IMG/VR virus record: IMGVR_UViG_3300042502_001233
Span: 186,001-250,000 of that record
Reading direction: 5' to 3' (one strand)
Length of the DNA: 64,000 bases
Every line of letters starts with the position of its first letter. Positions within the stretch are counted from its first letter, which is position 1. The notes beneath the pieces are model-generated. The model had not been told where the DNA came from. It did not search any database and saw nothing but the letters and a program-made list of their open reading frames with translations. Below, one piece after another: positions 3 to 15,971 of this stretch. A program made the position numbers and the translations under genes.

Positions 3-1457
3 ACTATTGACACAAAACAATGGGGTAATAAATTGGTTAAACTATTCGAAAAAAATCCTGAATATGGTATCATCGGTGTTGCTGGTAGCAAAAACATGCC
101 AGAGTCTGGTCAATGGTGGGAAAATAGAAGTAAAATGTATGGTCGCGTTCAACACACGCACGAAGGCAAAACTTGGTTATCAAGTTATTCTGAGGACTTA
201 GGTCAAGAACTTGAAGAAATTGTTGTTTGTGATGGTGTTTGGTTTTCTGTTGATAAAAGAAGATTGAAAAAAGAATTTAACGAAGAAGTTGAAGGGTTTC
301 ATTTTTATGATGTAACCTTTGCTTTTGAAAATTACCTACAAGGTGTTAAAGTTGGTGTAACAACTGCTATTAGAATCAATCACCAATCTATCGGTATGAC
401 CAACGAAGCGTGGGAAAAAAACAGAGCCGATTTCGCTGAAGCTTTTCAAGCATTCTTACCAGCAAACGTAAAGAAAACACTTCGAAAAGGGCAAAAACTT
501 AAAGTACTTATTGGTTGTTTAAGTTTTTCAAATTATACTGGTTCTGAGTTATATGTTTTTGAATTGGCAAAACAATTAATCAAACAAGGTTGTGAGGTTT
601 CTGTGTGTTCTAGTATCGGAGAACCTTTGTTATCTGCGGCAAATAAACTAGGGGTTAAAATGTATAGTATACAAGAACCACCTGGGTTTAAGTTAGGTGA
701 TGGTAAATGGATGTTAAAATCACCACAAGGTGATGTAGTCTCACAACCAAACACATTGTACAAAGTACAAGATGTTAATTTTGATGTGATTCACTTAAAC
801 CACAAACCAGTTACGGAACATTTATTGAGATTCTATCCAGAAACACCAGTAATTTGTTCTATACATTCAGAAGTAATATCTTTGGAGGAGCCAGTTATTT
901 CACCTCAAATAAAACAATACATCGCCATTAGACCAGAGATTAAAAAACACATTGTGGATACTTTTGGTGTTGATAAAGATTTGGTTAGTGTTATTTATAA
1001 CCCAATTGATGCTGATAAATTTAAAGTAGTTAACACAACTGAAAAACGAAATAAAAAAAGAATACTTTTTGTTGGTACCATTGATTATCTTAGAAGAAAC
1101 ACAATTCAAGATTTGATAAATGTTACTCGAGAAAACAACCAAGAACTTTGGATTCTTGGGAAGAAAAACGATACGTATTTAGATGAGATAATAACCAACG
1201 AACCACATGTAACATATCATGAACCTACATCTAATGTTGAAAAATTCATTCACCAATGTGATGAAACCGCTGGGATACTTTTAGGTAGAACAACTATTGA
1301 AGGTTGGATGTGTGGAAAATCTGGTTGGATTTACAATGTTGATTCTACTGGGGTTATATTGTCAAAAGCATTACATGAAGTACCTACAGACGTCGATAAA
1401 TTCAACAGCAAAAACATAACAACCCAAATAATTGAAGAATATAAAAAAATATTATAA
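3..1457 (+). CDS. Two-domain glycosyltransferase (N-terminal GT2-like, C-terminal GT4/GT-B); 5' end truncated by the window
   Basis: The frame is open back to position 3. GIIGVAG and FHFYD motifs (GT2-like), then TGSELY and ILFVGTID (GT-B fold). Confidence 0.8.
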   Translation, partial: TIDTKQWGNKLVKLFEKNPEYGIIGVAGSKNMPESGQWWENRSKMYGRVQHTHEGKTWLSSYSEDLGQELEEIVVCDGVWFSVDKRRLKKEFNEEVEGFHFYDVTFAFENYLQGVKVGVTTAIRINHQSIGMTNEAWEKNRADFAEAFQAFLPANVKKTLRKGQKLKVLIGCLSFSNYTGSELYVFELAKQLIKQGCEVSVCSSIGEPLLSAANKLGVKMYSIQEPPGFKLGDGKWMLKSPQGDVVSQPNTLYKVQDVNFDVIHLNHKPVTEHLLRFYPETPVICSIHSEVISLEEPVISPQIKQYIAIRPEIKKHIVDTFGVDKDLVSVIYNPIDADKFKVVNTTEKRNKKRILFVGTIDYLRRNTIQDLINVTRENNQELWILGKKNDTYLDEIITNEPHVTYHEPTSNVEKFIHQCDETAGILLGRTTIEGWMCGKSGWIYNVDSTGVILSKALHEVPTDVDKFNSKNITTQIIEEYKKIL

Positions 1458-2407
1458 TGAATGTAATAGAATGGTTTAGAAGAAAAGTTGCTGTAGTGTC
1501 ATTAGCTTTAAGCAACGTTGAAAAAGGTGCGTTGACGCAGACTGGTGAAGGTTTATCTAGCGATGTAACACATAGTCAAAGACTTAGTCAAGGTCAAGTT
1601 GCTGATTCGTTGATAAATGGCGAGGTGACGCAAGAGGTCTTAAACCTAAAATGGAGAACATACAAAGTTTTAAAAGCTACTGAAGGTCTTACAGCTGAAA
1701 TAGTTGGTTATGATGAAGACGGTATGCCTATTGTTAAAACTCAAAAAAAAAGTAAGAAAAAAGGTCTTAAAAAAGTAAAACTAGATACTGTTGATGATTA
1801 TGTGTTAGAGATGGTTGTCGACAATAGTGAGATTGTATTATCTGGAAGTCAAGCGATGGATAACGAACATATTAGCTTGTTAGATGAGGTTATGTTAAAC
1901 GATGGAGAGATGGGTCAAACAGCTACTCATGGTAGTATTGATTCTGACAAATATTTTATAACGAGTAAAACTGAACGACCTATAAAAATTGGTAGAGACA
2001 CAGTACCAAATTTTTACATAGAAAATTTTGCTAAAAAATTAAATGTTAGAAAAATAAATAAAAATAAAAGACTTTTAGAATTCTATGTTAGTAAATATGT
2101 TAACGAAGACAACAGAACTAGTAGACTATTTATTAGCGCTATAAAAAAAGTTATGAACGGTAACGCACAAAAACAAAGTTTTATAGACCTTAAAGATGTA
2201 GAATTTGTTACTTACAAAAGTTTAGGTGTTGAAGATTATTTAGAGTTTAAATACGATATAGAATCTTTTGATAAAATAATTGAATTTAACGGATTCTATG
2301 TTATAAAATTTGTGGCCAAAGTTACGACTAACGGTAAATATATTTTTGAAGAACATAGAGTAGATGAGTTAGATAAAAAATACGAACAAAAAGCTAGTAA
2401 AAAATGA
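1457..2407 (+). CDS. Hypothetical protein
   Basis: 316-aa ORF coupled to its neighbours by stop/start overlaps; no recognisable motif. Confidence 0.7.
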   Translation: MNVIEWFRRKVAVVSLALSNVEKGALTQTGEGLSSDVTHSQRLSQGQVADSLINGEVTQEVLNLKWRTYKVLKATEGLTAEIVGYDEDGMPIVKTQKKSKKKGLKKVKLDTVDDYVLEMVVDNSEIVLSGSQAMDNEHISLLDEVMLNDGEMGQTATHGSIDSDKYFITSKTERPIKIGRDTVPNFYIENFAKKLNVRKINKNKRLLEFYVSKYVNEDNRTSRLFISAIKKVMNGNAQKQSFIDLKDVEFVTYKSLGVEDYLEFKYDIESFDKIIEFNGFYVIKFVAKVTTNGKYIFEEHRVDELDKKYEQKASKK

Positions 2408-3123
2408 TAGTGATATTAACAACTTTATATAACGCTGAAGATTATATCGGTAAATGTATCAAATCAATAAAAAAACAAAAAAACACCGATTATAAGTGTT
2501 TTATATTAAATGATTTATCCACAGATATGTCAGCAAATATAGCTGAAGAATTAATAAAGGGTGATGATAGGTTTATGTTGATAAATAATTCAGTGAAAAT
2601 GTATCAACCAGGAAATTATAATCAAATAATCAATGGTGACTACGGATTGAAAGATGATGATATTATAGTCGAATTAGATGGCGATGATTGGTTTCCAGAT
2701 GAGCATGTTTTAGATAGAATTTATGAAGCATACTCAGATGGTGAAACTTGGATTACAAATGGTAGTTTTGTTTACTCAAATGGTCAAGCTGGTTTTTCAT
2801 CTAGACAACAAATAAATAATTTGAGGGCGATTAGTTTTACCGCGTCACACCTTAGAACATGGAAAGCTTTTTTATGGAGAAAAATAAAACAGGAAGATTT
2901 AAAAGATGAAAACGGTGAATATTGGAGAGTTGCTGGTGATTTATCTTTTATGTTCCCAATGCTAGAAATGTCTGGTGATGAACATTATAAATTTTTGTCA
3001 GAGACAAATTATGTTTACAATGAACAAAACCCATTAAATGACCACAAAGTCAATATGAGTTCAGTAAATGATATTGTTACAAAATTAAGAAACAAAACAC
3101 CTTACAACAAACTAAATAACTAG
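2404..3123 (+). CDS. GT2 family glycosyltransferase
   Basis: YNAEDYIGKCIKSI, FILNDLSTD and ELDGDD (DxD) motifs. Confidence 0.85.
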   Translation: MIVILTTLYNAEDYIGKCIKSIKKQKNTDYKCFILNDLSTDMSANIAEELIKGDDRFMLINNSVKMYQPGNYNQIINGDYGLKDDDIIVELDGDDWFPDEHVLDRIYEAYSDGETWITNGSFVYSNGQAGFSSRQQINNLRAISFTASHLRTWKAFLWRKIKQEDLKDENGEYWRVAGDLSFMFPMLEMSGDEHYKFLSETNYVYNEQNPLNDHKVNMSSVNDIVTKLRNKTPYNKLNN

Positions 3124-3125: not shown

Positions 3126-3926
3126 ATGATTTATACAAATTTAAAAGGTGGGTTAGGAAATATGTTATTTCAAATCGCAGCTACAAAATCTTTTTCAATT
3201 GATTATAATGTAGGTTTTTGTTTTACAAATTTTGATGACCAATTAAATTATTTAAACCGTGATAACCTTTATAATCCATCATTAAAACACGCAAATGAAT
3301 ATAGATTAATTTTTCCAGTGTTTTGTACTGATAGACCAAACCATGGCGTTCAAATAATAAATTTTCCTTTCGAGTACCATGATATCAAATTACCACAAAA
3401 TGATGTTTATATTGATGGGTTTTTTCAAAGTGAAAAATTTTTCAAACATAACAGACAACACATTTTAGAAATGTTTGAAACACCTAGTTTTATTAAAGAA
3501 ATCATAGATGGAAAATACCCATTTATTAAAAATAAAAGAACTAGTTCTTTGCATATTCGAAGAGGTGATTATGTTAAACATGAACAATTTCACCCATTAC
3601 AAAGTTTAGAATATTATAACAACGCAATTCAAATTCTTAAAGAAAAAACAGATTTATTTGTTGTTTTTAGTGATGATATTCCATGGTGTAAAGAAAACTT
3701 AAATATAGATAATATTGTTTACATTGAAAATGAAAAAGATTATATTGAATTGTACTTGATGTCAATGTGTGATAATAATGTTATAGCAAACTCTTCATTT
3801 TCTTGGTGGGGAGCTTGGTTAAACAAAAATGAAAATAAAATAGTAATTGGACCAAAAAAATGGTTTGGTCCTCAAATAAAAAGTGACCCTAAAGATATAA
3901 TTCCAGATAATTGGATAAAACTATAA
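3126..3926 (+). CDS. Alpha-1,2-fucosyltransferase (GT11)
   Basis: GGLGNMLFQ, SLHIRRGDY, VFSDD and NSSFSWWGAWL are GT11 signature motifs. Confidence 0.9.
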   Translation: MIYTNLKGGLGNMLFQIAATKSFSIDYNVGFCFTNFDDQLNYLNRDNLYNPSLKHANEYRLIFPVFCTDRPNHGVQIINFPFEYHDIKLPQNDVYIDGFFQSEKFFKHNRQHILEMFETPSFIKEIIDGKYPFIKNKRTSSLHIRRGDYVKHEQFHPLQSLEYYNNAIQILKEKTDLFVVFSDDIPWCKENLNIDNIVYIENEKDYIELYLMSMCDNNVIANSSFSWWGAWLNKNENKIVIGPKKWFGPQIKSDPKDIIPDNWIKL

Positions 3927-3935: not shown

Positions 3936-4346
3936 ATGGAAAAAATATATTCAAAAGTTGAAGAAGGAAAATTGCTTCACATTATAAACAGATTAGACGA
4001 AATAAATGGTCGTACTGAAGTAGTACCTGAAAATAATTTCATACAATGTGCGACATTGAAAATGGAAAAGGGTAAAACTTTTAAACCTCACAAACACATC
4101 ACAAAAGATAGACATCATCCAGAACAAATCGCCCAAGAATCTTGGGTTGTGATTAAAGGCAGTGTTAAGTGTATTTTTTATGACATCGATGATACTATTA
4201 TTGCGACACCAATTCTTAAAGCTGGTGATGCAAGCTTTACTTTATATGGTGGTCATACTTATGAAATCTTAGAAGAAGATACCATAGTTTATGAATATAA
4301 AACAGGTCCTTATGAAGGACAAGCCTTAGATAAAACTTTTTTATAA
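3936..4346 (+). CDS. Cupin-fold protein (WbuC/sugar isomerase-like)
   Basis: PHKH...QESWVV...GGH...YEYKTGPY cupin metal-binding pattern within a sugar gene cluster. Confidence 0.6.
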   Translation: MEKIYSKVEEGKLLHIINRLDEINGRTEVVPENNFIQCATLKMEKGKTFKPHKHITKDRHHPEQIAQESWVVIKGSVKCIFYDIDDTIIATPILKAGDASFTLYGGHTYEILEEDTIVYEYKTGPYEGQALDKTFL

Positions 4347-4347: not shown

Positions 4348-5211
4348 ATGAAATTATATTCTATTATCACACCTACAAAACACGGGTGGCATTATGGTTA
4401 TGGTTTTTTTTCTAATTATAGAATATGTTTAGAGGAACTTATTAGTCACCATGAAAATGGTAAACCTGAAATACCTTATATTTCATGGGCTAACACAACA
4501 TGGGTTGAAGATATAAACCCATTTGAAAATAAAGTAGAACCTTCAGATATAAACCCATTTGATTTTTGGTTTGAACAACCAAAAATAAACCCTGAGGATA
4601 TTGTGACTATAAACAATTACCCACCTAGTAATTATGGTACTATAATAGACCACGCACAACATTATTTTGATAATAAAATCGAATTAGAAAGACAACAAAC
4701 AATAGATAGGTTATACATTAAACCAAAACAATATATTTTAGATAAAATCGATGAAATATATGAAAAAGAATTTAAAGGACATGTTGTCTTGGCTGTGATG
4801 GCTAGAGGTACTGAATATAATCTACACCATCCAATGTATGGCGTTTTCGGTGTTGAAGATTATATAAAAGAAATTAGTAAAATATTAGAAAACCATAAAG
4901 AAATAACAAAATTATTTATTGTTAGTGAAGATATGGAATATATAACAGCCCTAGCCAACGCCTTCCCTAATTCTTATTTCATGCCAGACGTATTTAGACG
5001 AACTGACGAAACGATGGAATATATAAACCACGTACATTGTTGGCCAAATGTTAGTAAAAAAAGACCAGACCATTGTAGATTATTAGGAGAAGAAGTAATC
5101 ATCCAAGCTAAATTAATGGGTAAATGTGATTATTTATTTGGTAGACTATCTGGTGTTTTAGCTGGAGCGGTGCTTTGGAATGATAACTTAAAACAAATAT
5201 TTAAAATTTAA
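4348..5211 (+). CDS. NodZ/GT23-like or O-fucosyltransferase-like protein
   Basis: LAVMARGTEY, LFIVSED and MGKCDYLFG resemble GDP-fucose-binding motifs I-III. Confidence 0.5.
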   Translation: MKLYSIITPTKHGWHYGYGFFSNYRICLEELISHHENGKPEIPYISWANTTWVEDINPFENKVEPSDINPFDFWFEQPKINPEDIVTINNYPPSNYGTIIDHAQHYFDNKIELERQQTIDRLYIKPKQYILDKIDEIYEKEFKGHVVLAVMARGTEYNLHHPMYGVFGVEDYIKEISKILENHKEITKLFIVSEDMEYITALANAFPNSYFMPDVFRRTDETMEYINHVHCWPNVSKKRPDHCRLLGEEVIIQAKLMGKCDYLFGRLSGVLAGAVLWNDNLKQIFKI

Positions 5212-5214: not shown

Positions 5215-5796
5215 ATGAATAGAACAGAAATAATACAATTTTTAATTGATAAAATAGGTGGTAAAAAATATCTAGAAATAGGTATGGGTCCAGGTCTTAA
5301 TTTCAACACTATTAAATGCGACTATAAAATAAGTGTTGACCCAAACCCTACAGTTCCAGTAACACATTCAATAACCTCAGATGAATTTTTTAACCAAAAT
5401 AATGAAACTTTTGATGTTATCTTTATTGATGGGTTACATTGGTCAGAACAAGTTTATAAAGACATTGTAAATTCTTTAAACGTACTAAATGACAATGGGT
5501 ATATTATATGTCATGATATAAACCCTCATTCCGAATTCATTCAAAGATACCCACAAGCTATTCGAGAATCAGAATGGACTGGAGATTGTTGGAAAGCGTG
5601 GGTAAGGTTGAAAAGTGAACGAAGTGATTTAAACATGGCTGTTATTGACACTGATTATGGTTGCGGTGTTATAACCAAGGGTAAACAAAAATTAATAACT
5701 GTTAATGAAGAATTAACTTGGGATTTATTAGATAACAATAGAAAAGAGTTGCTTAATTTAATAACAACAGAAGATTTTTTAAAGATACATGGTTAA
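5215..5796 (+). CDS. Class I SAM-dependent methyltransferase
   Basis: YLEIGMG and FDVIFIDGLH motifs. Confidence 0.8.
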   Translation: MNRTEIIQFLIDKIGGKKYLEIGMGPGLNFNTIKCDYKISVDPNPTVPVTHSITSDEFFNQNNETFDVIFIDGLHWSEQVYKDIVNSLNVLNDNGYIICHDINPHSEFIQRYPQAIRESEWTGDCWKAWVRLKSERSDLNMAVIDTDYGCGVITKGKQKLITVNEELTWDLLDNNRKELLNLITTEDFLKIHG

Positions 5797-6319
5797 TATT
5801 ATTGGTGAAGATGTGTATATGGATTCAGATGTAGTAATAAAACACGACAATACTATTGAAGGTTCACACGTAGCTATAGATAAAGGGTTTTATTGTACGA
5901 CTAACATATCAATTGGTGATTATATACATATTGGACCATACGTTACCGTTATTGGTGGTAAAAATTCTAATTTTATCGCCAAAGGTTTTAATAACGTAAT
6001 GGCTGGTGCTAGGATTATATGTGGTTCAGATAGATTTGATGATTCTGGTTTATTTGGCGCCATGATACCTCAAGAATTAAAAGGTAAACAAATTATCAAA
6101 CCTGTAATTATGGAAGAATTTTCAAATATAGGTACTAATGCGATTGTTCTACCTGGTTCTACATTAAGAAAAGGGGTCTTATTAACCGCTGGTAGTTTAT
6201 TGATTGGTGACACAGAAGAATGGGGTGTATATAAAGGTAACCCAGCTGTTTTAATAAAAAAAATAGACGGAACTAAAATAATAGAAAATGCTAAAAAATT
6301 AGGTTATAATGAAATATAA
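5789..6319 (+). CDS. Hexapeptide-repeat (left-handed beta-helix) acyltransferase
   Basis: IGDYIHIGPYVTVIG, IGTNAIVLPG and GVYKGNPA. Confidence 0.75.
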   Translation: MVNIIGEDVYMDSDVVIKHDNTIEGSHVAIDKGFYCTTNISIGDYIHIGPYVTVIGGKNSNFIAKGFNNVMAGARIICGSDRFDDSGLFGAMIPQELKGKQIIKPVIMEEFSNIGTNAIVLPGSTLRKGVLLTAGSLLIGDTEEWGVYKGNPAVLIKKIDGTKIIENAKKLGYNEI

Positions 6320-7136
6320 ATTAGAATTTGTAAAAATAAGCCCAGAACATGAATTTGCTGGTGTTGGGTTTGCTGGTAATATTTTTATTACGTTAAACGC
6401 TTTAACTCATTTAAGTGACGATGATAAGTTATTTGTCGACATGGAAACTAACGAATGTGTGTGTACTGAGGTTGGTGTTGAATTACACGGTACTAAAAAT
6501 TCGTGGGAATATTATTTTGAACAGACAAAAATAGAACCAGAAGAAGAATATAAAACAATAAATAGTCTTATTTCAGCTAACATACATTATGAGAATAGAG
6601 ACGCTTTCATGTATCCGAATAATTTTATTTCACTTAAAAATAAGTTTTATAATTCTTTTAAGTTAAAACCTTATCTAGTAAAACTGTTAGATGATTATTA
6701 TGATGAAAATATAAAAGGAAAAATCACCTTAGGTGTCCAAGTTAGACTAACAGATATGAAACATTATCATAATGTTTCACCAGTATCTAATTACATATCA
6801 AAAATAAAAGAAATTTTATCTGAAAGGCCAGAAATTGAACAAATATTTTTAGCAACTGATGATAGTGAAGTTATTAACATAATTAAAGAAAATGTTAATA
6901 TACCTGTAATTTATTATAAAGATATGTTTAGAGCAGATGCTGCAAACCCTCATCTACACCCTTATGACAGGTTTAAAGCTAAAAGAGAATTACATAGATA
7001 TAAATTAGGTATTGAATGTATACAAGAAATATTCACACTATCTAAATGTGATTATCTATTAAAAGCTGACGTTTCCTCAGTATCAATAATTGCTAGCATA
7101 TTATCAGAAAATATAAAACAAGTATATAAATTATGA
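6309..7136 (+). CDS. Second NodZ/O-fucosyltransferase-like protein
   Basis: LGVQVRLTD, IFLATDD and LSKCDYLL motifs. Confidence 0.55.
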   Translation: MKYKLEFVKISPEHEFAGVGFAGNIFITLNALTHLSDDDKLFVDMETNECVCTEVGVELHGTKNSWEYYFEQTKIEPEEEYKTINSLISANIHYENRDAFMYPNNFISLKNKFYNSFKLKPYLVKLLDDYYDENIKGKITLGVQVRLTDMKHYHNVSPVSNYISKIKEILSERPEIEQIFLATDDSEVINIIKENVNIPVIYYKDMFRADAANPHLHPYDRFKAKRELHRYKLGIECIQEIFTLSKCDYLLKADVSSVSIIASILSENIKQVYKL

Positions 7137-9325: not shown

Positions 9326-10073
9326 AACCCAACATTACAATCCATGGCCTATAGGTAAGGTGCCAAAAGAATTACAAAGACCTGAATTAGATAGGTTAAA
9401 AGAATTAGGTTATCATTGGGATGACCCTAGAGATGTTGTGTTAATGTTTGAAGAAAAAGTTGCTGCTTTTGCTGGTAGTAAATATGCGGTATCTGTTGAC
9501 TGTTGTTCACACGGTTTGTTCTTATCTTTAGAGTATTTAAAACACACTAAAGAAGTTAAAAAAGATGATATAATAACTATACCAAAAATGACGTATGTGT
9601 CGGCTCCGATGCAAATTATACACGCTGGATTGGGTGTTAAATTTGAAGATTTAGAATGGTCTGGTTTATACCAATTCAAAAGCACTAGAATTTGGGATGC
9701 AGCTGTTAGATGGAACAAAGGTATGTATGTTGGTGACAATGCTTTACAAGTGGTTTCCTTTCAAATAAAAAAGAGGGTACCTATCGGAAAAGGTGGTATC
9801 ATTCTTACTGACGATTTTGAAGCTTATAAATGGCTTAAATTGGCTTCATATGATGGTAGAGACCTAAACACACAATATACTGACGTAAATCACGTGCAAA
9901 TGCTTGGATATCATATGTACATGACACCTGAGGATGCAGCTAGAGGTATAATTCTTATGGATAGCGTCCCAGAATATAATGAAGACACTGGTAACCATAC
10001 AACATATGTTGATGTAAGTAAAATATTTGATAATATTTTTTTAACCATTGACAAAATTAAAAAAAATAACTAA
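9312..10073 (+). CDS. DegT/DnrJ/EryC1/StrS PLP-dependent sugar aminotransferase (short form)
   Basis: FEEKVAAFAGSKYAVSVDCCSHGL, IWDAA and SFQIKK (PLP lysine region). Confidence 0.8.
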   Translation: MIMNKTQHYNPWPIGKVPKELQRPELDRLKELGYHWDDPRDVVLMFEEKVAAFAGSKYAVSVDCCSHGLFLSLEYLKHTKEVKKDDIITIPKMTYVSAPMQIIHAGLGVKFEDLEWSGLYQFKSTRIWDAAVRWNKGMYVGDNALQVVSFQIKKRVPIGKGGIILTDDFEAYKWLKLASYDGRDLNTQYTDVNHVQMLGYHMYMTPEDAARGIILMDSVPEYNEDTGNHTTYVDVSKIFDNIFLTIDKIKKNN

Positions 10074-10088: not shown

Positions 10089-11069
10089 ATGGAAAAAAAG
10101 AAAAAAGCTTTTATCACTGGGATTAACGGTCAAGATGGTTCATATTTGGCTGAATATTTATTATCCTTAGATTATGAAGTTCACGGTATAATCAGAAGAA
10201 ATTCAACTGTAGAATCACAACAAAGTAGATTCAGTGAAGAATTAAGACATAAAGTAAATATTCATTATGGTGACTTATTAGACCAAGGTGGTTTAGAAAA
10301 ATTGTTAGACCAAATACAACCAGATGAAATATATAACTTGGCGGCTCAAAGTCATGTTAGAATTAGTTTTGATATCCCACAATTTACAGTACAAACAAAC
10401 GCAATAGGTGTGTTAAACATATTAGAGGCATATAGACGCGCATGCCCAACAGCTAAATTCTATCAAGCAAGTTCTTCAGAAATGTTCGGTAACTCAGTAG
10501 ATGCTGATGGGTTCCAAAGAGAAACAACACAAATGACACCAGTTAGCCCTTATGGTTGTTCTAAGGTATTTGGATATAATATTACTAGAAACTATCGTAA
10601 TGCTTACAAATTACACACATGTAACGGAATTCTTTTCAACCATGAATCACCAAGAAGGGCCTCAAATTTTGTAACCAACAAAGTTGTTAAAACTGCTGTT
10701 GAAATTAAATTAGGTTTAGCGGATAAATTGGTACTAGGTAATATGGATTCGTATAGAGATTGGGGTCATTCAAAAGACTACGTTAGAGCCATGCATTTGA
10801 TTATTAACCATCACACTCCAGATGACTTTGTTGTATCTACAATGACAACGCATTCAGTTAGAGAAATGGTTGAATACGTATTTAAAAAATTAGATTTAGA
10901 TTACACACAATATGTTTCACAAGATTCTAAGTTTCTTAGAGCTGAAGAATTAAAATATTTAAAAGGTGATTCTACAAAAATTAGAGAAACATTAGGTTGG
11001 AAACCAGAATATACATTTGAAACCTTGATGGATGATATGATTAACGGTTGGTTAGAAAAATTAAAATAA
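10089..11069 (+). CDS. gmd: GDP-mannose 4,6-dehydratase
   Basis: FITGINGQDGSYLAEYLL, YNLAAQSHV, YQASSSEMFG, SPYGCSK and RDWGHSKDYV. Confidence 0.97.
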   Translation: MEKKKKAFITGINGQDGSYLAEYLLSLDYEVHGIIRRNSTVESQQSRFSEELRHKVNIHYGDLLDQGGLEKLLDQIQPDEIYNLAAQSHVRISFDIPQFTVQTNAIGVLNILEAYRRACPTAKFYQASSSEMFGNSVDADGFQRETTQMTPVSPYGCSKVFGYNITRNYRNAYKLHTCNGILFNHESPRRASNFVTNKVVKTAVEIKLGLADKLVLGNMDSYRDWGHSKDYVRAMHLIINHHTPDDFVVSTMTTHSVREMVEYVFKKLDLDYTQYVSQDSKFLRAEELKYLKGDSTKIRETLGWKPEYTFETLMDDMINGWLEKLK

Positions 11070-11075: not shown

Positions 11076-11112
11076 TATAAATATCCTAGTGTTTGCATTA
11101 GGATATTTATAT
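11076..11112. terminator. Long hairpin (terminator-like) whose 3' arm contains the ATATTTAT motif upstream of phoH
   Basis: TATAAATATCCTAGTG-TTTG-CATTAGGATATTTATA inverted repeat. Confidence 0.55.
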
Positions 11113-11135: not shown

Positions 11136-11996
11136 ATGACTAGAAAAGCTACAACAGTTCCAAAAAGTGGTACCACAAAAACTACTAGAGCTAAAAAATC
11201 AGTTTTACCAAAAGAATCGACAATTAACCTTAAACAAGATTTATTGTCTCAAATCAAAATAGATTTGAAACATAAAAACGAAACTCAAAAAAAGCTAACT
11301 AATTCTATTAAAAATGGCGACGTAACCGTATGTATCGGCCCAGCTGGTACGGGTAAAACTCTTCTTAGTGTTGCTGAAGCTTTATTGTTGCTAAAAACAC
11401 ACCCAGACAAATATCATGACATAAAATTGGTTAAGTCTATAGTCCAACTTAAAGATGAAGACCTAGGTACTTTGCCAGGTGATGAAAAAGATAAACTTAA
11501 ATTCATCATGATGTCTTTCCTTGATGCTTTCTACCAATTAATCGGTGAAGAACTTACAGATAAACTTATAGAGGTTGGGTATATTAAAATGGAAGTTTTT
11601 GGTTCTGTTAGAGGTAGGTCAATCCCAAATTGTATTCTATTGTTTGATGAATTTCAAAACGTAAACGACGGTAACGCAAAAACACTTCTTACAAGATTTT
11701 CTGAAAACACCAAAGTTGTAATCTTAGGTGATACAAATCAAGTAGACCTTAAAAAGAAAGAAGATAGTTCATTGGGTGAGTTGGTTAAAATGATTAAAAT
11801 GTTACCAGATGAAATGGGTGTTAGTGTTATTGAATTTAACGAAAACGAAATTGTTAGACACAGACTGACAAAGTTCTTTGTAAAACTTTTTGAACACCCA
11901 GAATATAAAAAACAAAACAAACCAAATAACCTAAATATTCGAGTGGTCACCAAAAAGAAAACTTTATTAGAAAAACTTTTAGATTTATTTAGATAA
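11136..11996 (+). CDS. phoH: PhoH-like ATPase
   Basis: GPAGTGKT, LGTLPG, RGRS, DEFQN, LLTR and GDTNQVD; IVRH near the C terminus. Confidence 0.9.
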   Translation: MTRKATTVPKSGTTKTTRAKKSVLPKESTINLKQDLLSQIKIDLKHKNETQKKLTNSIKNGDVTVCIGPAGTGKTLLSVAEALLLLKTHPDKYHDIKLVKSIVQLKDEDLGTLPGDEKDKLKFIMMSFLDAFYQLIGEELTDKLIEVGYIKMEVFGSVRGRSIPNCILLFDEFQNVNDGNAKTLLTRFSENTKVVILGDTNQVDLKKKEDSSLGELVKMIKMLPDEMGVSVIEFNENEIVRHRLTKFFVKLFEHPEYKKQNKPNNLNIRVVTKKKTLLEKLLDLFR

Positions 11997-12045: not shown

Positions 12046-12675
12046 ATGAAAATAGGAATAAGCATAAATGAGGTTTTAAGGGATTTTATTGGACAGTTCA
12101 TCTACACCTATGACAAGTATATTGTTCCAGAGCTAGAAGCTAATGGGGTAACAGTACCAGACTTAGAGATAGAAGATGTAACCAGTTTCAATTTAATGGA
12201 CCATTTTGAATTTAAAGACATCAACAGATTCAATACGTTTCTATATTTAGAAGCACCTCTAGAAATTTTTGGTCATGCCGACCTGATGTCAGATGGTTTA
12301 ATGAACCATTTTAATAACTTTTTAGTTAACATTAAAGACGACGAAGAACACGAAGTATTTTTGGTTAGTCGTGAAGTTGATAAAAGTATCCCATCTACTT
12401 ATTTTTTCCTTTCTAAAACTGGTTGTAAAGCCGATAAAATACAGTTCTGTTCTAATAATGAAAATGAATGGGATGGAATTGACGTTTTGGTAACTGCTAA
12501 CGTAATAGCTTTGGAAAACAAACCACAGGGTAAAATCAGTATTAAAGTTAAATCACCTTACAATAAAGATGTAAAAGCTGATTACGAAATTGACACACTT
12601 TTAGATTTTATAAATGATGAAGAATTCAGAAATAGAATTTTAAATACAATAATAACAACTTACGAAGAAATTTAA
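12046..12675 (+). CDS. HAD-like 5'(3')-deoxyribonucleotidase-fold protein with a degenerate catalytic motif
   Basis: MKIGISINEVLRDF resembles the IGIDxDEVL motif but lacks the aspartates; PYNKD near the C terminus. Confidence 0.45.
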   Translation: MKIGISINEVLRDFIGQFIYTYDKYIVPELEANGVTVPDLEIEDVTSFNLMDHFEFKDINRFNTFLYLEAPLEIFGHADLMSDGLMNHFNNFLVNIKDDEEHEVFLVSREVDKSIPSTYFFLSKTGCKADKIQFCSNNENEWDGIDVLVTANVIALENKPQGKISIKVKSPYNKDVKADYEIDTLLDFINDEEFRNRILNTIITTYEEI

Positions 12676-12680
12676 AAATT

Positions 12681-13034
12681 ATGATTGATTTTGGCGGAGC
12701 GATTTATTATCTAGATATTGATAGATTTACAGAACTTATCAAAATGGATGACAAACAAGATGACAAAGTTTACGAAACGGTTATCAAAAATTTTAAAGAT
12801 GAAAAAGGAAAACTTCTTACTACTGAAGAATTAACAACATGTAGAGAAAGAGACGTTTTCATCAATACTAACAAATATGAAATGTTCAGATTAATGATAG
12901 AAATTATCTTAGATGACATTGAAGAAGCTGACGATTCGTTAGGTTCAGAAAGAGCTTTATCAAAAGCTTTATTCTCTTACAAATTAGCATTTAATACTCT
13001 ACTACATTACGGAATATTAGTAGAAGTTGAATAA
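12681..13034 (+). CDS. Hypothetical protein
   Basis: 117-aa ORF in operon context. Confidence 0.65.
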   Translation: MIDFGGAIYYLDIDRFTELIKMDDKQDDKVYETVIKNFKDEKGKLLTTEELTTCRERDVFINTNKYEMFRLMIEIILDDIEEADDSLGSERALSKALFSYKLAFNTLLHYGILVEVE

Positions 13035-13056
13035 TAAAATTAAAATAAAAAAACAA

Positions 13057-14205
13057 ATGGAAGAACAAAAAAAACAAATGGATGAACAAATCAATCAATT
13101 AAAATCTGTGATTGATAAATTAGAAACAAAAGATTTTAGTTTGTATTTTTTCACATTGGATACAAAAGGTAACCCTACTGCTGGAATAGCCAACATCTAC
13201 GAACACGTTAAAGTGTTGAACGAATTAGGTTATAAAGCCGCTATCCTTCATGAAAAAAACGATTATAAACTTAGAGGTGATGAAAACGGTAACGGAGTTG
13301 CTGATTGGTTAGGTGAAGAATACGCACAATTACCACACATTTCTATTGAAGGACAAGAATTACAAATTAGCCCAGCTGATTTTATTATCATCCCTGAGAT
13401 TTTCTCAAACATCATGGACCAAGTTAAAGGTTTTCCATGTAAAAAAATCGTATTGTCACAAAGTTACGATTACTTATTAGAATTACTACCTGTTGGTAAA
13501 AGATGGGATATGGATTATGGTTTTATTGATGTGATAACAACTTCTGAAAAACAATCACAATACGTTAAATCATTATTTCCATCTATTAGAACACACGTTG
13601 TTCCAGTATCAATTCCAACATATTTCAAAGATAGTGATAAACCTAAAAAACCTATCGTTGCTGTTCACACTAGAAACCAAGGTGATGCGGCTAAATTAGC
13701 AAAATCATTCTACCTTCAATTTCCAATTTACAAATGGGTTACATTTAAAGAATTAAGAGGGTTGAGTAGAGAAAAATTTGCGGCTCAATTAAGTGAATCA
13801 TGTGTTGCTGTTTGGATTGATGATGTGGCTGGTTTTGGTACTTTTCCGTTGGAAGCCATTGAATGTAACACTCCAGTAATCGGAAAAATGCCTAACATGA
13901 TTCCAGAATGGATGGAGGCTATTGATGAAGAAGGAAACTCATATATTAAGAACAATGGTGTTTGGACAAACACTACACTTAACATTCCAGAACTAATCGC
14001 AACTTATATGAAAGTTTGGTTAGAAGATGCCGTACCACAAGATTTATTGGATAGTATTAAAGATAGTCAAGGTAAATATACACCTGAAAACCAAAAAACA
14101 ACAATGGAAAGTGTTTACGAAAATTTAGTTTATACAAGAACTAACGAACTTAAAATAACTTTAGAGAAATTAGAAGAATCTCTATTAGAAACAACTAACG
14201 CATAA
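13057..14205 (+). CDS. GT4-like glycosyltransferase
   Basis: ATG at 13057 preferred. AGIANIYEHV, DFIIIPE and FGTFPLEAIECNTPVIG (EGFGLP.LEA-like). Confidence 0.6.
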   Translation: MEEQKKQMDEQINQLKSVIDKLETKDFSLYFFTLDTKGNPTAGIANIYEHVKVLNELGYKAAILHEKNDYKLRGDENGNGVADWLGEEYAQLPHISIEGQELQISPADFIIIPEIFSNIMDQVKGFPCKKIVLSQSYDYLLELLPVGKRWDMDYGFIDVITTSEKQSQYVKSLFPSIRTHVVPVSIPTYFKDSDKPKKPIVAVHTRNQGDAAKLAKSFYLQFPIYKWVTFKELRGLSREKFAAQLSESCVAVWIDDVAGFGTFPLEAIECNTPVIGKMPNMIPEWMEAIDEEGNSYIKNNGVWTNTTLNIPELIATYMKVWLEDAVPQDLLDSIKDSQGKYTPENQKTTMESVYENLVYTRTNELKITLEKLEESLLETTNA

Positions 14206-14210
14206 TACAA

Positions 14211-14258
14211 ATGAAAGAAATAAATAATATCTCTGTCATTCTTCCAAATAAAAAATAA
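14211..14258 (+). pseudogene. Orphaned 5' fragment of the GT2 gene (MKEINNISVILPNKK*)
   Basis: The mini-ORF matches the N terminus of the downstream GT2 gene (NISVIIP) and sits just upstream of the endonuclease gene. Confidence 0.6.
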
Positions 14259-14307
14259 GAATTCTGTCTTTTTACCGAAAATAAGATATTTATTATGAAA
14301 GAAAAAT

Positions 14308-15147
14308 ATGGTAATATATAAGACAACAAATTTAGTAAACGGTAAATTTTATATAGGTAAAGATGAAAACAATAACAATAACAATAAATATTTAGGTTCT
14401 GGTAAAATACTTAAATTAGCTTTTGAAAAATATGGAAAAGAAAATTTTAAAAAAGAAATTATTGAATCATGTATCTCAAAAGTCGAATTGGAGGAAAGAG
14501 AAAAATATTGGATTGACAAATTATCAGCAACAACTCTTGGTTATAATATAACTGAAGGTGGTACTGGGGGTCAAACAAAATTTAAAACAATTTATCAATA
14601 TGGTAAAAATGGTGATTTATTAAAAAAATGGGATTCTTCTTCCTTAGTTGAAAAAAAATTAGGTATTGATTCATCAGCAATATTAAAAAATTGTAAAGGT
14701 GTTTTAAAAAGTGCTGGTGGTTACATATGGTCATACGAATCTAATGGGGTAGATAAATACAATGATAATAAATCAATTAGTATTTTACAATATGATATGA
14801 ATGGTGATTTTATCGAATCTTGGGTTTCAATGAGTAAAGCTGAGAAAAATTTAGGGTTAACCAGAGGTAATATTTATAAAGTTATTGACGATAATTCAAA
14901 AACTTCTGGTGGTTATTATTGGGCGTCGAATAAAGGTATAATAGAACAAAAAATAAAAATAAAGTACCCATATAAAACATCTATAGAAGTTTTACAGTGT
15001 GATGTTAATGGGAATATTGTTAAAACATGGAAATCAATAAATGAAGCTGCTAAAGGATTAAAATATTCAGCATCTAGCATTTTATCAGCAATTAAAAATT
15101 TTAAACAATATAAAAACCATTATTGGTATAATAAAAATAATATATAA
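14308..15147 (+). CDS. Free-standing GIY-YIG homing endonuclease with NUMOD1-like repeats
   Basis: VIYKTTNLVNGKFYIGK...YLGSG...YNITEGGTGG, plus three IxQY(D)xxG...W.S repeats. Confidence 0.9.
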   Translation: MVIYKTTNLVNGKFYIGKDENNNNNNKYLGSGKILKLAFEKYGKENFKKEIIESCISKVELEEREKYWIDKLSATTLGYNITEGGTGGQTKFKTIYQYGKNGDLLKKWDSSSLVEKKLGIDSSAILKNCKGVLKSAGGYIWSYESNGVDKYNDNKSISILQYDMNGDFIESWVSMSKAEKNLGLTRGNIYKVIDDNSKTSGGYYWASNKGIIEQKIKIKYPYKTSIEVLQCDVNGNIVKTWKSINEAAKGLKYSASSILSAIKNFKQYKNHYWYNKNNI

Positions 15148-15158
15148 AAAAATTAAAA

Positions 15159-15971
15159 ATGAAAACAAATAAAAAAAATGATAGTAACATAAGCGTTATA
15201 ATCCCAATACACGAATTGGATGACATTACAAAACAATTATTTGCAAACGCTGTTAAAAGTGTTACAGACCAAACAGTTAGACCTGATAGCTTAATCATCG
15301 TAGTACCTAAAGGTAGTGACGTTGTTAAATATGTGAAAGAGTTTGATTATGATAATTACTCAAATTCAGTTACCGTTGTTGAAAATGACGGTGAAACAGA
15401 TTTTTGTTCACAAGTTAATTACGGTGTATCTCAATGTAAAACTGAATGGTTTAGTATTTTAGAATACGATGACGAATACGCTAAGATTTGGTTTAAAAAC
15501 GTTGTAGAATATAAAAACGCGCATACAAACGTTGACTTATTCTTACCAATCATCGTGGACGTTGACGCTAAAGGTTCTTTTGTTGGTTTAACAAACGAAG
15601 CAGTTTGGGCCAACAGTTTTTCAGATGAATTAGGTATTTTAGATAACAACGCGTTGTTAACATATCAAAATTTCAATACTGATGGGATGGTAATTAGAAA
15701 ATCGACCTATGAAGATTTAGGTGGGTTTAAAAGTAATATAAAATTAACATTCGTTTATGAATTTTTACTACGTATGACATTTAAAGATGTTAGAGTTATG
15801 GTTGTACCTAAATTTGGTTACAAACACGTAAACCAAAGAGAAGGTTCTCTATTCTCTTCATACAAACAAACTATCGACCCAGTTGAAGCTAGATATTGGT
15901 TATCAGCAGCTAAAAAGGAATACTATTTTGCAAATGATAGAAAAATAACATACGAAGTTCAAAATGGATAA
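15159..15971 (+). CDS. GT2 family glycosyltransferase
   Basis: ISVIIPIH, KSVTDQT and ILEYDD. Confidence 0.75.
   Translation: MKTNKKNDSNISVIIPIHELDDITKQLFANAVKSVTDQTVRPDSLIIVVPKGSDVVKYVKEFDYDNYSNSVTVVENDGETDFCSQVNYGVSQCKTEWFSILEYDDEYAKIWFKNVVEYKNAHTNVDLFLPIIVDVDAKGSFVGLTNEAVWANSFSDELGILDNNALLTYQNFNTDGMVIRKSTYEDLGGFKSNIKLTFVYEFLLRMTFKDVRVMVVPKFGYKHVNQREGSLFSSYKQTIDPVEARYWLSAAKKEYYFANDRKITYEVQNG

What the first reader, a model, noticed from the sequence alone, without database searches (positions are those of the whole stretch)
3..15971. Phage glycan island with three fucosyltransferase classes and decorating enzymes
The island carries GT11 (alpha-1,2), a GT10-like (alpha-1,3) enzyme and two NodZ/O-fucosyltransferase-like genes. 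It also has four GT2/GT4-type enzymes, gmd, an aminotransferase, an acetyltransferase, a methyltransferase, an SGNH esterase and a cupin. This is enough to build a multiply fucosylated, modified glycan. Bacteroidota are known to use fucosylated protein O-glycans. The inference is that the phage glycosylates its virion or remodels the host surface (superinfection exclusion, receptor masking or mimicry). DNA hypermodification is less likely because no base-hydroxylase partner was seen.
Basis: partly seen in the sequence, partly recalled or inferred. Interest (0 to 1): 0.62.

Follow-up and report, generated by a model that had tools for sequence, protein, structure and literature searches.

The report
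Lake phage sugar-chain gene island
A 362-kb T4-like phage from lake water, probably infecting Bacteroidota, carries a real 16-kb cluster of soluble sugar-chain-building enzymes; the kind is already known from cyanophages, but its conserved core points to an amino-sugar rather than plain fucose, and what gets glycosylated is still unknown.

Summary
Window 1-15971 (the first gene starts 195 nt upstream) encodes GT11, GT10-like and two NodZ/FUT8-like enzymes, a GT2_5+GT4 fusion, two GT2s and a previously unrecognised GT-B. It also encodes Gmd, a methyltransferase, a left-handed beta-helix (LbH) acyltransferase, an SGNH enzyme, a cupin and a DegT-like protein.

The replicon is a complete 362-kb T4-like jumbo phage. 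TAnnTTTG promoter motifs and start sites without Shine-Dalgarno sequences support a Bacteroidota host.

- The genome has a single SDR (Gmd) and no GDP-fucose synthase. None was found in 80 related loci either.
- The conserved core there is cupin (80/80) + a truncated ~200-250 aa "mini-DegT" that keeps the PLP lysine (72/80) + Gmd (72/80), with LbH in 50/80. In some relatives these form one four-gene cassette, so the phage's own product is probably a GDP-(N-acyl)amino-6-deoxyhexose.
- The glycosyltransferase complement varies between close relatives.
- Every island protein is soluble, and the genome encodes no flippase, polymerase, ligase or priming transferase.
- DNA glycosylation is unlikely.
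- Virion glycosylation is favoured over host-envelope remodelling only weakly.

Similar islands are published for cyanophage S-SCSM1, and cultured Flavobacterium phage immuto carries one.

The parts
1..1457 (+). Two-domain glycosyltransferase (GT2_5 N-terminal, GT4 C-terminal), 550 aa; the gene starts 195 nt upstream of the window. First gene of the island.
   Evidence: Pfam PF13712 73 bits and PF13439 54 bits; start located in L005; homologues in 22/80 related loci.
1457..2407 (+). Unknown 316-aa protein; follows the fusion GT in 9 related loci.
   Evidence: No Pfam, PHROG or Atlas match.
2404..3123 (+). GT2 (GT-A) glycosyltransferase.
   Evidence: Pfam PF00535 64 bits; present in 27/80 related loci.
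3126..3926 (+). GT11-family (alpha-1,2-fucosyltransferase-type) GDP-sugar transferase.
   Evidence: Pfam PF01531 94 bits; GGLGN, IRRGDY and SSFSWW motifs; 33-40% identity to GT11 genes of 84 Synechococcus phage records; present in 49/80 related loci.
3936..4346 (+). Cupin, 136 aa. Conserved core gene; probably a nucleotide-sugar 3,4-ketoisomerase or epimerase acting on the Gmd product.
   Evidence: 187 IMG/VR relatives at 69-96% identity. Model pLDDT 88. Weak best fold matches to FdtD/FdtA/QdtA, WbcA, StrM and RmlC. Sits in a cupin-LbH-DegT-Gmd cassette in LR756511 and in L083, L088 and L048. Atlas cluster labelled QdtA-like.
4348..5211 (+). NodZ/FUT8-like (GT23-type) transferase, paralogue a.
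   Evidence: Pfam NodZ 18.5 bits, below cut-off; family profile hits NodZ 2hhc at E 1e-7; present in 16/80 related loci.
5215..5796 (+). Class I SAM methyltransferase (Methyltransf_24).
   Evidence: Pfam 41 bits; present in 6/80 related loci.
5789..6319 (+). Left-handed beta-helix acyltransferase; probably N-acylates the amino-sugar nucleotide.
   Evidence: Best solved relative is the AntD N-acyltransferase set 3vbi-3vbp, E 3e-12, full length (identity of 3vbn confirmed in PMC6031040). NeuD/PglB/VioB family at 43 bits. Present in 50/80 related loci, adjacent to cupin and DegT in the minimal cassettes.
6309..7136 (+). NodZ/FUT8-like (GT23-type) transferase, paralogue b; its motif LGVQVRLTD resembles the FUT8 donor motif (comparison from memory).
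   Evidence: Pfam NodZ 19.8 bits, below cut-off; profile hits NodZ and FUT8, with invariant R146; present in 20/80 related loci.
7133..7837 (+). SGNH/GDSL-type esterase or acyltransferase.
   Evidence: Weak Pfam SGNH at 18 bits; GDSH and DDIH blocks; present in 17/80 related loci.
7816..8625 (+). GT10-like (alpha-1,3-fucosyltransferase-type) GDP-sugar transferase.
   Evidence: Pfam PF00852 37 bits; hits plant FucTA, H. pylori FucT and FUT9, with the EN...TEK donor motif aligned; present in 43/80 related loci.
8579..9325 (+). DUF1796 protein (annotated as a putative papain-like peptidase); role unknown.
   Evidence: Pfam 52 bits; present in 6/80 related loci, always between GT10 and DegT.
9312..10073 (+). 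Mini-DegT: a truncated PLP-dependent sugar aminotransferase-like protein, 253 aa (about 200 aa in most relatives). Conserved core gene.
   Evidence: Pfam PF01041 62 bits, covering only profile positions 26-94 and 156-243 of 360. Invariant D129, S149, F150, K154, G159, G161 and G162 in 35 homologues. Model pLDDT 87.5; best Foldseek match is GDP-perosamine synthase, E 4e-11. 1753 database relatives. Present in 72/80 related loci.
10089..11069 (+). GDP-mannose 4,6-dehydratase (Gmd); the only SDR in the genome.
   Evidence: Pfam PF16363 385 bits; TIGR01472 383 bits; present in 72/80 related loci at 66-96% identity.
11076..11111 (+). 16-bp-stem hairpin followed by a T-rich tail. Probable end of the island's main transcription unit; overlaps class-B promoter-like motifs ahead of PhoH.
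11136..11996 (+). PhoH-like ATPase; a conserved flank, not a glycan enzyme.
   Evidence: Pfam 167 bits; present in 27/80 related loci.
12046..13034 (+). Two conserved ORFs of unknown function (209 and 117 aa).
   Evidence: No family or PDB profile match; the 209-aa ORF is found in 23/80 related loci and the 117-aa ORF in 6/80.
13027..14205 (+). GT-B (GT4-like) glycosyltransferase, not recognised by Pfam.
   Evidence: Family profile against PDB 8xsg 'putative glycosyltransferase' at E 7e-14, plus BshA-type GT-B enzymes; present in 18/80 related loci.
14308..15147 (+). GIY-YIG/NUMOD homing endonuclease; a mobile insertion.
   Evidence: Pfam; found in only 1/80 related loci; paralogues elsewhere in the genome.
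15159..15971 (+). GT2 (GT-A) glycosyltransferase.
   Evidence: Pfam 35 bits; present in 7/80 related loci; one of only three GT2 hits in the genome.

Best explanation
The island is a glycan-assembly module of a lytic, T4-like, 362-kb lake-water phage whose host is probably a member of the Bacteroidota. All of its enzymes are soluble.

Shown:
- The enzyme families.
- The island genes from the fusion GT to Gmd are tightly packed on one strand and end at a hairpin.
- Neither this genome nor the related loci searched encode a GDP-fucose synthase.
- Relatives share a core of cupin + mini-DegT + Gmd (often + LbH), while the glycosyltransferase complement varies.

Inferred mechanism:
1. Host GDP-mannose is dehydrated by phage Gmd to GDP-4-keto-6-deoxymannose.
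2. The cupin isomerises or epimerises this intermediate.
3. The truncated PLP enzyme aminates it, and the LbH enzyme N-acylates it. The product is a phage-specific GDP-(N-acyl)amino-6-deoxyhexose. Host Fcl may also turn some intermediate into GDP-fucose.
4. The GDP-sugar-dependent GT11, GT10-like and two GT23-like enzymes, with the GT-A and GT-B enzymes, build a short branched oligosaccharide in the cytoplasm. The methyltransferase and the SGNH enzyme decorate or trim it.

The phage encodes no priming phosphoglycosyltransferase, flippase, polymerase, ligase or oligosaccharyltransferase. The least-assumption acceptor is therefore a protein present in the cytoplasm, most likely phage structural proteins (virion glycosylation, as in chloroviruses and mycobacteriophages). 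The variable transferase set suggests diversifying selection on an exposed glycan.
For: - Family assignments.
- Phage identity and completeness.
- Host signals.
- One SDR only, and no nucleotidyltransferase.
- No Fcl among the extra SDRs of relatives.
- Core conservation (80/72/72/50 of 80 loci) and contiguous cupin-LbH-miniDegT-Gmd cassettes in L083, L088 and L048.
- The same cassette order with a full-length DegT in huge phage LR756511.
- Mini-DegT keeps the PLP-binding Lys and Asp in 35 homologues. Its model best matches GDP-perosamine synthase.
- LbH is closest to the sugar N-acyltransferase AntD.
- No TM segment in any island protein. No genome protein has more than 4 predicted TM segments.
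- All GT2 hits lie in the island.
- The island is reproduced in independent lake metagenomes.
- DNA glycosylation is disfavoured.
Against: - No direct evidence identifies the acceptor.
- The cupin's assignment to sugar-nucleotide chemistry rests on weak fold matches (Foldseek E about 8e-3; Z up to 7.4, which is within the noise range) plus gene context. Sequence profiles find no FdtA or RmlC relative.
- The mini-DegT lacks about 60 internal residues and the whole C-terminal domain, so aminotransferase activity is unproven.
- The LbH also resembles O-acetyltransferases.
- GT10, GT11 and GT23 enzymes are known for GDP-beta-L-fucose. Host Fcl could supply it, so plain fucosylation remains possible.
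- The island has no class-B (putative late) promoter motif inside it. It is preceded by an A-like (host-type) motif. That fits early expression and does not favour a virion-directed role.
- Soluble transferases can act on host undecaprenyl-linked intermediates at the inner face of the membrane.
Confidence: 0.4

Rival explanations
1. Host-envelope remodelling. The soluble phage transferases act at the cytoplasmic face on the host's own undecaprenyl-linked LPS, capsule or general O-glycan intermediates. Host flippases and ligases then export the altered glycan. This changes the infected cell's surface and could give superinfection exclusion, stop progeny being lost on debris, or mask receptors.
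For: - This is the reading usually given to the similar 'LPS / cell-wall modification' gene sets of T4-like cyanophages (PMC9602691).
- The island lacks the putative late-promoter motif and sits behind nucleotide-metabolism genes that carry a host-type TAnnTTTG motif.
- The GT2 resembles lipid-linked-glycan transferases such as PglI and TuaG.
- Bacteroidota build fucose-containing O-glycans on lipid carriers (established knowledge).
- A transferase complement that varies between close relatives fits an arms race at the cell surface.
Against: - The 362-kb genome has no priming transferase, flippase, polymerase, ligase or Gtr-type membrane protein anywhere.
- Nine transferase domains plus a private sugar-nucleotide route is far more than known surface-converting phages carry.
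- No lysogeny context was seen in the window.
Confidence: 0.3
2. Plain fucosylation. Phage Gmd only boosts the flux, host Fcl completes GDP-L-fucose, and the GT11, GT10 and GT23-like enzymes add several fucoses. The cupin, mini-DegT and LbH serve a side branch or are inactive.
For: - GT11 has all the signature motifs and GT10 has the donor motif. The NodZ-like profile matches NodZ and FUT8.
- Cyanophage S-SCSM1 pairs the same three transferase classes with Gmd and Fcl.
- Gmd is the committed, feedback-controlled step of the pathway (established knowledge).
Against: - The complete genome has no Fcl, and none was found among the extra SDRs of 80 related loci.
- Cupin and mini-DegT are more conserved and more constant than any fucosyltransferase-type gene: 80/80 and 72/80 loci against at most 49/80. 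The mini-DegT's catalytic residues are invariant. They are therefore not decaying passengers.
Confidence: 0.25
3. DNA hypermodification. The transferases glycosylate a hydroxyl-bearing base in phage DNA, as in T4, RB69 or the 5hmC glycan clusters.
For: - T4-like phages do this, and recent work shows phage transferases related to LPS enzymes acting on DNA (PMC13326640; bioRxiv 10.1101/2023.12.21.572611).
- The island lies just downstream of dUTPase/dCTP-deaminase-like and HD-domain genes.
- A thymidylate synthase homologue is in the window.
Against: - The thymidylate synthase homologue has L143, C146, D169 and N177, which is the ordinary dUMP methylase signature. It has neither the D169N nor the N177D change.
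- The genome has no C5-methyltransferase and no TGT/DpdA, and gave no TET/JBP hit. The TET/JBP search rang in no control genome, so that blank is weak.
- Known DNA transferases use UDP-sugars. This island is built around a GDP-sugar pathway.
- Flavobacterium phage immuto has an analogous island, yet its DNA shows canonical dA, dC and dT by LC-MS; only dG is replaced, by a non-glycosylated deazaguanine.
Confidence: 0.04

Closest known systems
Glycan / 'LPS' gene islands of T4-like cyanophages (e.g. Synechococcus phage S-SCSM1; GT11 genes in 84 Synechococcus phage records)
   Same: - T4-like myovirus.
- Gmd together with alpha-1,2-FucT-type, NodZ-type and further glycosyltransferases in one region.
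- GT11 at 33-40% identity and Gmd at about 47% identity.
- Function known only from annotation.
   Different: - S-SCSM1 has GDP-fucose synthase and GDP-mannose 3,5-epimerase. This phage has neither.
- Among GenBank phages, the cupin was found only in LR756511. The mini-DegT was found in seven records: four immuto records, LR756511, LR756502 and Synechococcus phage S-SCSM2R.
- The host here is probably Bacteroidota, not cyanobacteria.
Flavobacterium phage vB_FspM_immuto (NC_055915), cultured, 160 kb
   Same: - Closest named capsid protein (38% identity).
- Bacteroidota host.
- An island with several transferases, a methyltransferase, a mini-DegT (40% identity) followed by an LbH and an SDR, all on one strand.
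   Different: - No cupin homologue and no Gmd hit was listed for it. It has a full-length aminotransferase and a WcaG-like SDR instead.
- Half the genome size.
- No GT10, GT11 or NodZ-type genes are annotated in the stretch.
dTDP-Qui3NAc / Fuc3NAc pathway (4,6-dehydratase, QdtA/FdtA cupin ketoisomerase, QdtB/FdtB DegT aminotransferase, QdtC/FdtC LbH N-acetyltransferase) and GDP-N-acetylperosamine pathway (Gmd, Per, PerB)
   Same: The same four enzyme classes in one cassette (dehydratase, cupin, DegT-type PLP enzyme, LbH). Gmd and a perosamine-synthase-like fold tie the cassette to GDP-sugars.
   Different: - The nucleotide is GDP, not dTDP. The perosamine route needs no cupin.
- The PLP enzyme is truncated to about 200-250 aa.
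- The cupin shows no detectable sequence similarity to FdtA/QdtA.
- The product is unknown.
Virus-encoded capsid glycosylation machinery of chloroviruses (PBCV-1) and virion glycosylation of mycobacteriophages
   Same: - Soluble virus-encoded transferases, including multi-domain fusions.
- A methyltransferase and virus-encoded Gmd.
- Cytoplasmic assembly without a lipid carrier.
(Established knowledge; reviews PMC9614988 and PMC7019647, listed.)
   Different: - PBCV-1 also encodes the epimerase/reductase for GDP-fucose.
- In mycobacteriophages the transferase genes sit within the late structural operon.
- No glycoprotein has been shown for this phage.
Huge uncultured phages LR756511 (595 kb) and LR756502 (642 kb)
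   Same: - LR756511 has consecutive cupin (54% identity), LbH (47%), DegT and Gmd (67%) genes.
- LR756502 has an LbH at 77% identity, a short DegT (43%) and four GT11 paralogues.
   Different: - In LR756511 the DegT is full length (342 aa).
- In LR756502 the LbH is fused to an SDR.
- Different genome sizes. No capsid comparison with these two records was made.

Membership tests
CAZy GT11 (alpha-1,2-fucosyltransferase family) | Match to the family model above its curated cut-off, with the signature motifs (N-terminal G-x-G-N, HxRRGDY, SxFSWW). | tested here: met
   PF01531 94.1 bits against a 23.9 cut-off. GGLGN, IRRGDY and SSFSWW are read directly from the sequence.
CAZy GT11 (alpha-1,2-fucosyltransferase family) | Transfers L-fucose from GDP-beta-L-fucose in an alpha-1,2 linkage. 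| not testable with these tools
   Needs an enzyme assay. The phage itself cannot make GDP-fucose.
CAZy GT10 (alpha-1,3/4-fucosyltransferase family) | C-terminal donor domain with the FxxxxEN...(Y/F)xTEK motif. | tested here: met
   PF00852 37.1 bits against 23.9. The motif aligns with plant FucTA, H. pylori FucT and FUT9. The N-terminal acceptor domain is short.
CAZy GT23 / NodZ (alpha-1,6-fucosyltransferase family) | Match to the NodZ model above its cut-off; conserved Arg of the GDP-fucose-binding motif. | tested here: inconclusive
   Single sequences score 18.5 and 19.8 bits against a 28.3 cut-off. A 26-member family profile hits NodZ at E 1e-7 and FUT8 at 4e-5. R146 is invariant and aligns to the VHVR motif.
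De novo GDP-L-fucose pathway (Gmd + Fcl/GMER) | Both GDP-mannose 4,6-dehydratase and GDP-4-keto-6-deoxymannose 3,5-epimerase/4-reductase are present. | tested here: not met
   Gmd is present. A PF01370 search of the complete 362-kb genome finds only Gmd. The extra SDRs in relatives score 38-62 bits on the Fcl model, whose cut-off is 500.
DegT/DnrJ/EryC1 sugar aminotransferases | Fold-type I PLP enzyme of about 360-390 aa with a large domain and a C-terminal domain; Schiff-base Lys and PLP-binding Asp. | tested here: inconclusive
   - PF01041 at 62.5 bits, over the cut-off.
- K154 and D129 are invariant in 35 homologues.
- The best fold match is GDP-perosamine synthase.
- Only profile positions 26-94 and 156-243 of 360 are present. 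The family is consistently 180-250 aa.
FdtA/QdtA sugar 3,4-ketoisomerases (or RmlC-type epimerases) | Cupin fold with catalytic His residues; sequence membership in the family; encoded next to a dehydratase, an aminotransferase and an acetyltransferase. | tested here: inconclusive
   - Cupin fold with an invariant H52-x-H54.
- The top Foldseek rows are FdtD, FdtA and QdtA, but E is about 8e-3. VIA Z reaches only 7.4, with WbcA, FdtD, StrM and RmlC among generic cupins.
- No Pfam or PDB sequence match.
- The gene context is met.
Wzx/Wzy- or ABC-dependent O-antigen / capsule locus | Priming phosphoglycosyltransferase, flippase or ABC exporter, polymerase and ligase. | tested here: not met
   No island protein has a predicted TM segment. 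No protein in the genome has more than 4 predicted TM segments in a crude hydropathy scan.
Phage DNA-glycosylation gene clusters (hmC, 5hoC or 5hmC-TET types) | An enzyme that creates a hydroxyl-bearing base: dCMP hydroxymethylase or 5hodCMP synthase variants of ThyA, or C5-methyltransferase + TET. | tested here: not met
   The ThyA homologue has canonical L143, D169 and N177. No PF00145 hit and no PF12851 hit in the genome. The PF12851 search rang in no control genome, so that blank is weak.
T4-like (Straboviridae-type) myoviruses | gp23-type capsid protein, gp20 portal, gp21 prohead protease and T4-type large terminase. | tested here: met
   PF07068 244 bits, PF07230 246 bits, PF03420 92 bits and PF03237. 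Identity to named phages is at most 43%.

The most novel reading that the evidence does not exclude
A widespread lineage of freshwater and marine Bacteroidota phages carries a conserved three-to-four-gene core: Gmd, a cupin, a half-size PLP 'mini-DegT' and an LbH. On this reading the core makes a GDP-linked N-acyl-amino-6-deoxyhexose that has not been described. It could be an L-configured amino analogue of fucose, if the cupin is a 3,5-epimerase standing in for the missing Fcl. The fucosyltransferase-family enzymes would then have been recruited to transfer this sugar onto virion proteins in the cytoplasm, with the transferase complement diversifying between close relatives.
Probability: 0.15. 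Interest if true: 0.75.

Novelty: new variant of a known kind. Interest (0 to 1): 0.5.

Why it matters
Phage glycan islands are common in aquatic T4-like phages, yet no acceptor or glycan structure has been established for any of them.

This island is useful for three reasons:
- It defines a compact, highly conserved core: a cupin at 69-96% identity across 80 viral contigs, with a half-size DegT enzyme.
- Around that core the transferase set varies.
- A related island sits in a cultured Flavobacterium phage, so the questions 'which sugar?' and 'virion or host surface?' become directly testable.

A working 200-aa DegT-type aminotransferase would also be of enzymological interest. If virions are glycosylated, that would extend virus-encoded protein glycosylation from giant viruses and mycobacteriophages to abundant aquatic phages of Bacteroidota.

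Tried and rejected
- Megablast of the island against GenBank phages found no near relative.
- Rfam over the whole window found no family at gathering score, so no group I intron call was made for the split thyA.
- The cupin gave no informative hit by single-sequence or profile search of PDB sequences. Its Foldseek and VIA matches are weak. I therefore do not file it as an FdtA/QdtA member.
- ORF 1457-2407 has no Pfam, PHROG or Atlas lead; the Atlas model has pLDDT 0.32.
- ORF 12046-12675: a profile search of PDB was uninformative. PHROGs gave nothing for the unknown ORFs.
- The T4 late-promoter consensus TATAAATA is enriched (29 against 14 expected), but it lies in the opposite orientation relative to genes. 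I re-read it as the class-B motif ATATTTAT(A/T). Assigning class B to 'late' and class A to 'host-type or early' is an inference from a few genes. I use it only as weak evidence.
- A sigma-70-type promoter scan found no more sites than shuffled sequence.
- I considered DNA hypermodification seriously because of recent papers, and rejected it on the thymidylate synthase residues, the absent partner enzymes and the immuto nucleoside data.
- I searched relatives for a second SDR that could be Fcl. All the extra SDRs are RmlB- or GalE-like.
- I sent no complex prediction, because the report claims no specific protein-protein contact. I did not use the large HMMER representative search, because word search and IMG/VR scans already gave hundreds of relatives.

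Full report
**What the window is.** The 64-kb window is bases 186001-250000 of a 362,018-bp IMG/VR virus record that CheckV rates complete. The window encodes a gp23-type major capsid protein (26119-28008, minus strand), a gp20 portal, a gp21 prohead protease and a T4-type large terminase interrupted by an intein. Capsid identity to any named phage is low. The closest are Flavobacterium phage immuto at 38%, an uncultured 484-kb phage at 43% and Microcystis phage Mel-JY01 at 42%. G+C is about 30%. It is a distant T4-like jumbo phage.

**Habitat.** Near-identical sequence (76-95% of sampled 31-mers) occurs in lake-water metagenomes of six further studies. Contigs from four of these runs tile window 3000-8999 at 100% identity across gene junctions. 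The island is therefore not an assembly chimera.

**Host.**
- The octamer TAnnTTTG lies 20-40 nt upstream of about 100 of 457 called genes. TATATTTG occurs 54 times and TATCTTTG 23 times.
- Shine-Dalgarno cores occur upstream of 3% of genes, which is the random expectation.
- Adenine is enriched at -3 (0.67) and at -11 to -13 (0.61-0.64).
- These are the -7 promoter element and the SD-less, A-rich initiation regions described for Bacteroidota (PMC6847099).
It is an inference, not a demonstration.

**Observation.**
- GT11 and GT10-like pass their Pfam cut-offs and carry the family's donor-binding motifs.
- The two NodZ-like paralogues fail the Pfam cut-off individually. As a family profile they hit NodZ (E 1e-7) and FUT8 (E 4e-5), with an invariant Arg.
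- ORF 13027-14205 is an additional GT-B transferase.
- That gives nine transferase domains in eight proteins, and all GT2 hits of the genome lie here.
- The first gene begins 195 nt before the window. It is preceded by dUTPase-like and HD-domain genes.
- From that gene to Gmd (window -195 to 11069) the genes are packed or overlapping on one strand. They end at a 16-bp-stem hairpin at 11076-11111.

**The sugar-nucleotide part.**
- A search of the whole genome with the SDR epimerase/dehydratase model finds only Gmd. No nucleotidyltransferase is present.
- The phage therefore starts from host GDP-mannose and cannot itself finish GDP-fucose.
- The 136-aa ORF at 3936-4346 has 187 relatives in IMG/VR at 69-96% identity.
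- In the 80 loci fetched, the constant partners are the cupin (80), a short DegT-like protein (72) and Gmd (72), then LbH (50), GT11 (49) and GT10 (43). The remaining island genes are each found in at most 27 loci.
- In L083, L088 and L048 the four genes cupin-LbH-miniDegT-Gmd are contiguous.
- In the 595-kb phage LR756511 the same order occurs with a full-length 342-aa DegT.
- This is the enzyme set of the QdtA/B/C and FdtA/B/C amino-sugar routes, here attached to Gmd.

**The DegT-like protein.**
- It is consistently 180-250 aa.
- It lacks profile positions 95-155 and everything after position 243 of 360.
- It keeps the PLP-binding Asp (D129), the SFxxxK lysine (K154) and the GxGG turn as invariant columns in 35 homologues.
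- It models confidently (pLDDT 87.5), and its best match is GDP-perosamine synthase.
- It has 1,753 database relatives, some on contigs of 340-376 kb.

**The cupin and the LbH.**
- The cupin model is confident, but its structural matches are weak. They mix sugar ketoisomerases and epimerases with generic cupins.
- The LbH enzyme is closest to AntD, an N-acyltransferase for a 4-amino-4,6-dideoxy sugar nucleotide. O-acetyltransferases also score.

**No Fcl in relatives.** The second SDRs found near the island in some relatives are dTDP-glucose dehydratase-like or GalE-like, never Fcl.

**What I conclude about the donor.** The conserved fate of the Gmd product in this lineage is most likely amination and N-acylation, giving a GDP-(N-acyl)amino-6-deoxyhexose of undetermined position and configuration. 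Fucose made with host Fcl is not excluded.

**The acceptor.**
- None of the island proteins has a transmembrane segment.
- No protein in the genome has more than four predicted segments. The phage therefore brings no priming transferase, flippase, polymerase, ligase or oligosaccharyltransferase.
- This fits direct cytoplasmic glycosylation of proteins, as in chloroviruses and mycobacteriophages. It also fits parasitising host lipid-linked pathways.
- A second enriched motif, (A/G)ATATTTAT(A/T)A, lies 20-30 nt upstream of the protease, terminase and scaffold-like genes and of PhoH. It does not occur inside the island.
- The island's first gene is instead preceded by a TATATTTA-G variant of the host-type motif.
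- This weakly suggests non-late expression. It does not discriminate, because virus-encoded glycosylation enzymes can be made early.
- I favour virion glycosylation (0.4) over host-envelope remodelling (0.3) on parsimony only.

**DNA modification.** Recent work shows that T4-like phages can glycosylate DNA using ThyA-derived 5-hydroxy-dCMP synthases or methyltransferase/TET pairs.
- The window does hold a ThyA homologue (44121-46307, minus strand). It is split by a GIY-YIG ORF.
- Its active-site residues are the canonical L143, C146, D169 and N177.
- The genome has no C5-methyltransferase and no TGT/DpdA, and gave no TET/JBP hit. The TET/JBP search rang in no control genome, so that blank is weak.
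- Flavobacterium phage immuto carries an analogous island with a mini-DegT, an LbH, an SDR and several transferases. Its DNA shows canonical dA, dC and dT by LC-MS; only dG is replaced, by a non-glycosylated deazaguanine.

**Comparison with what is known, and novelty.**
- Islands combining Gmd with alpha-1,2-FucT-type, NodZ-type and other transferases are published for T4-like cyanophages. S-SCSM1 additionally has Fcl. GT11 homologues occur in 84 Synechococcus phage records.
- The kind is therefore known.
- What differs here is the probable Bacteroidota host, the absence of Fcl, and the conserved cupin + half-size DegT core. Among GenBank phages the cupin recurs only in LR756511. The mini-DegT recurs in seven records: four immuto records, LR756511, LR756502 and Synechococcus phage S-SCSM2R.
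- I rate it a new variant of a known kind, interest 0.5.

Noticed in passing
window 44121-46307 (- strand): The thymidylate synthase gene is split. About 1.1 kb, carrying a GIY-YIG endonuclease ORF (44718-45413), sits exactly between the ...QRS and D-FLGLPFN active-site segments, which recalls the T4 td intron with I-TevI. Rfam found no group I intron at gathering score. The upstream exon is itself in two overlapping frames (45996-46331 and 45556-45999), so there is a frameshift, a sequencing error or a second insertion.
   Followed up: partly
window 34596-37595 (- strand): The large terminase (999 aa) carries an intein with a LAGLIDADG endonuclease domain.
   Followed up: no
window 48260-53593 (+ strand): A ClpB/ClpC-like AAA+ chaperone is encoded in two pieces. 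The first (48260-50068) has the Clp_N and AAA1 domains. The second (51932-53593) has the AAA2 domain with an intein-splicing domain. Two unknown ORFs separate them.
   Followed up: no
whole genome; examples at window 11104-11117, 16702-16709, 20278-20285, 30256-30263: There are two classes of upstream motif. TAnnTTTG (the Bacteroidota -7 element) is found upstream of about 100 genes. (A/G)ATATTTAT(A/T)A lies 20-30 nt upstream of many genes, including structural ones, and is possibly the phage's late promoter. Start sites lack Shine-Dalgarno sequences and are A-rich at -3 and at -11 to -13.
   Followed up: partly
window 15972-16700 (+ strand): A weak sigma-70 region-2-like protein lies directly after the last GT2. 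It is a candidate phage sigma factor.
   Followed up: no
window 22451-22897 (+ strand): ADP-ribosyltransferase of the ART-PolyVal type (63 bits).
   Followed up: no
window 26119-28008 (- strand): The major capsid protein is 629 aa. The gp23 model covers residues 296-616, plus a short N-terminal piece. About 200 extra residues are unexplained and could be an insertion or decoration domain.
   Followed up: no
L005:15727-17877 (genome 181927-184077), upstream of the window: A 716-aa protein with a LAGLIDADG/intein-type endonuclease domain. With the terminase and ClpB inteins and at least six GIY-YIG paralogues, the genome is rich in selfish elements.
   Followed up: no
window 57758-59167 (- strand): A leucine-rich-repeat protein (469 aa), which is unusual in a phage.
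   Followed up: no
L010 (LR756502.1 446018-482773): The 642-kb uncultured phage has a larger sugar cluster. It holds four GT11 paralogues, an SDR-LbH fusion whose LbH is 77% identical to this phage's, a UDP-glucose/GDP-mannose dehydrogenase and an SDR + C-methyltransferase fusion.
   Followed up: partly
window 12046-12675 (+ strand): A conserved 209-aa ORF found in 23/80 related loci. Its N-terminus (MRIGI-INGVLRD) looks like a HAD/5'(3')-deoxyribonucleotidase motif with the first Asp replaced. No family or PDB match.
   Followed up: partly
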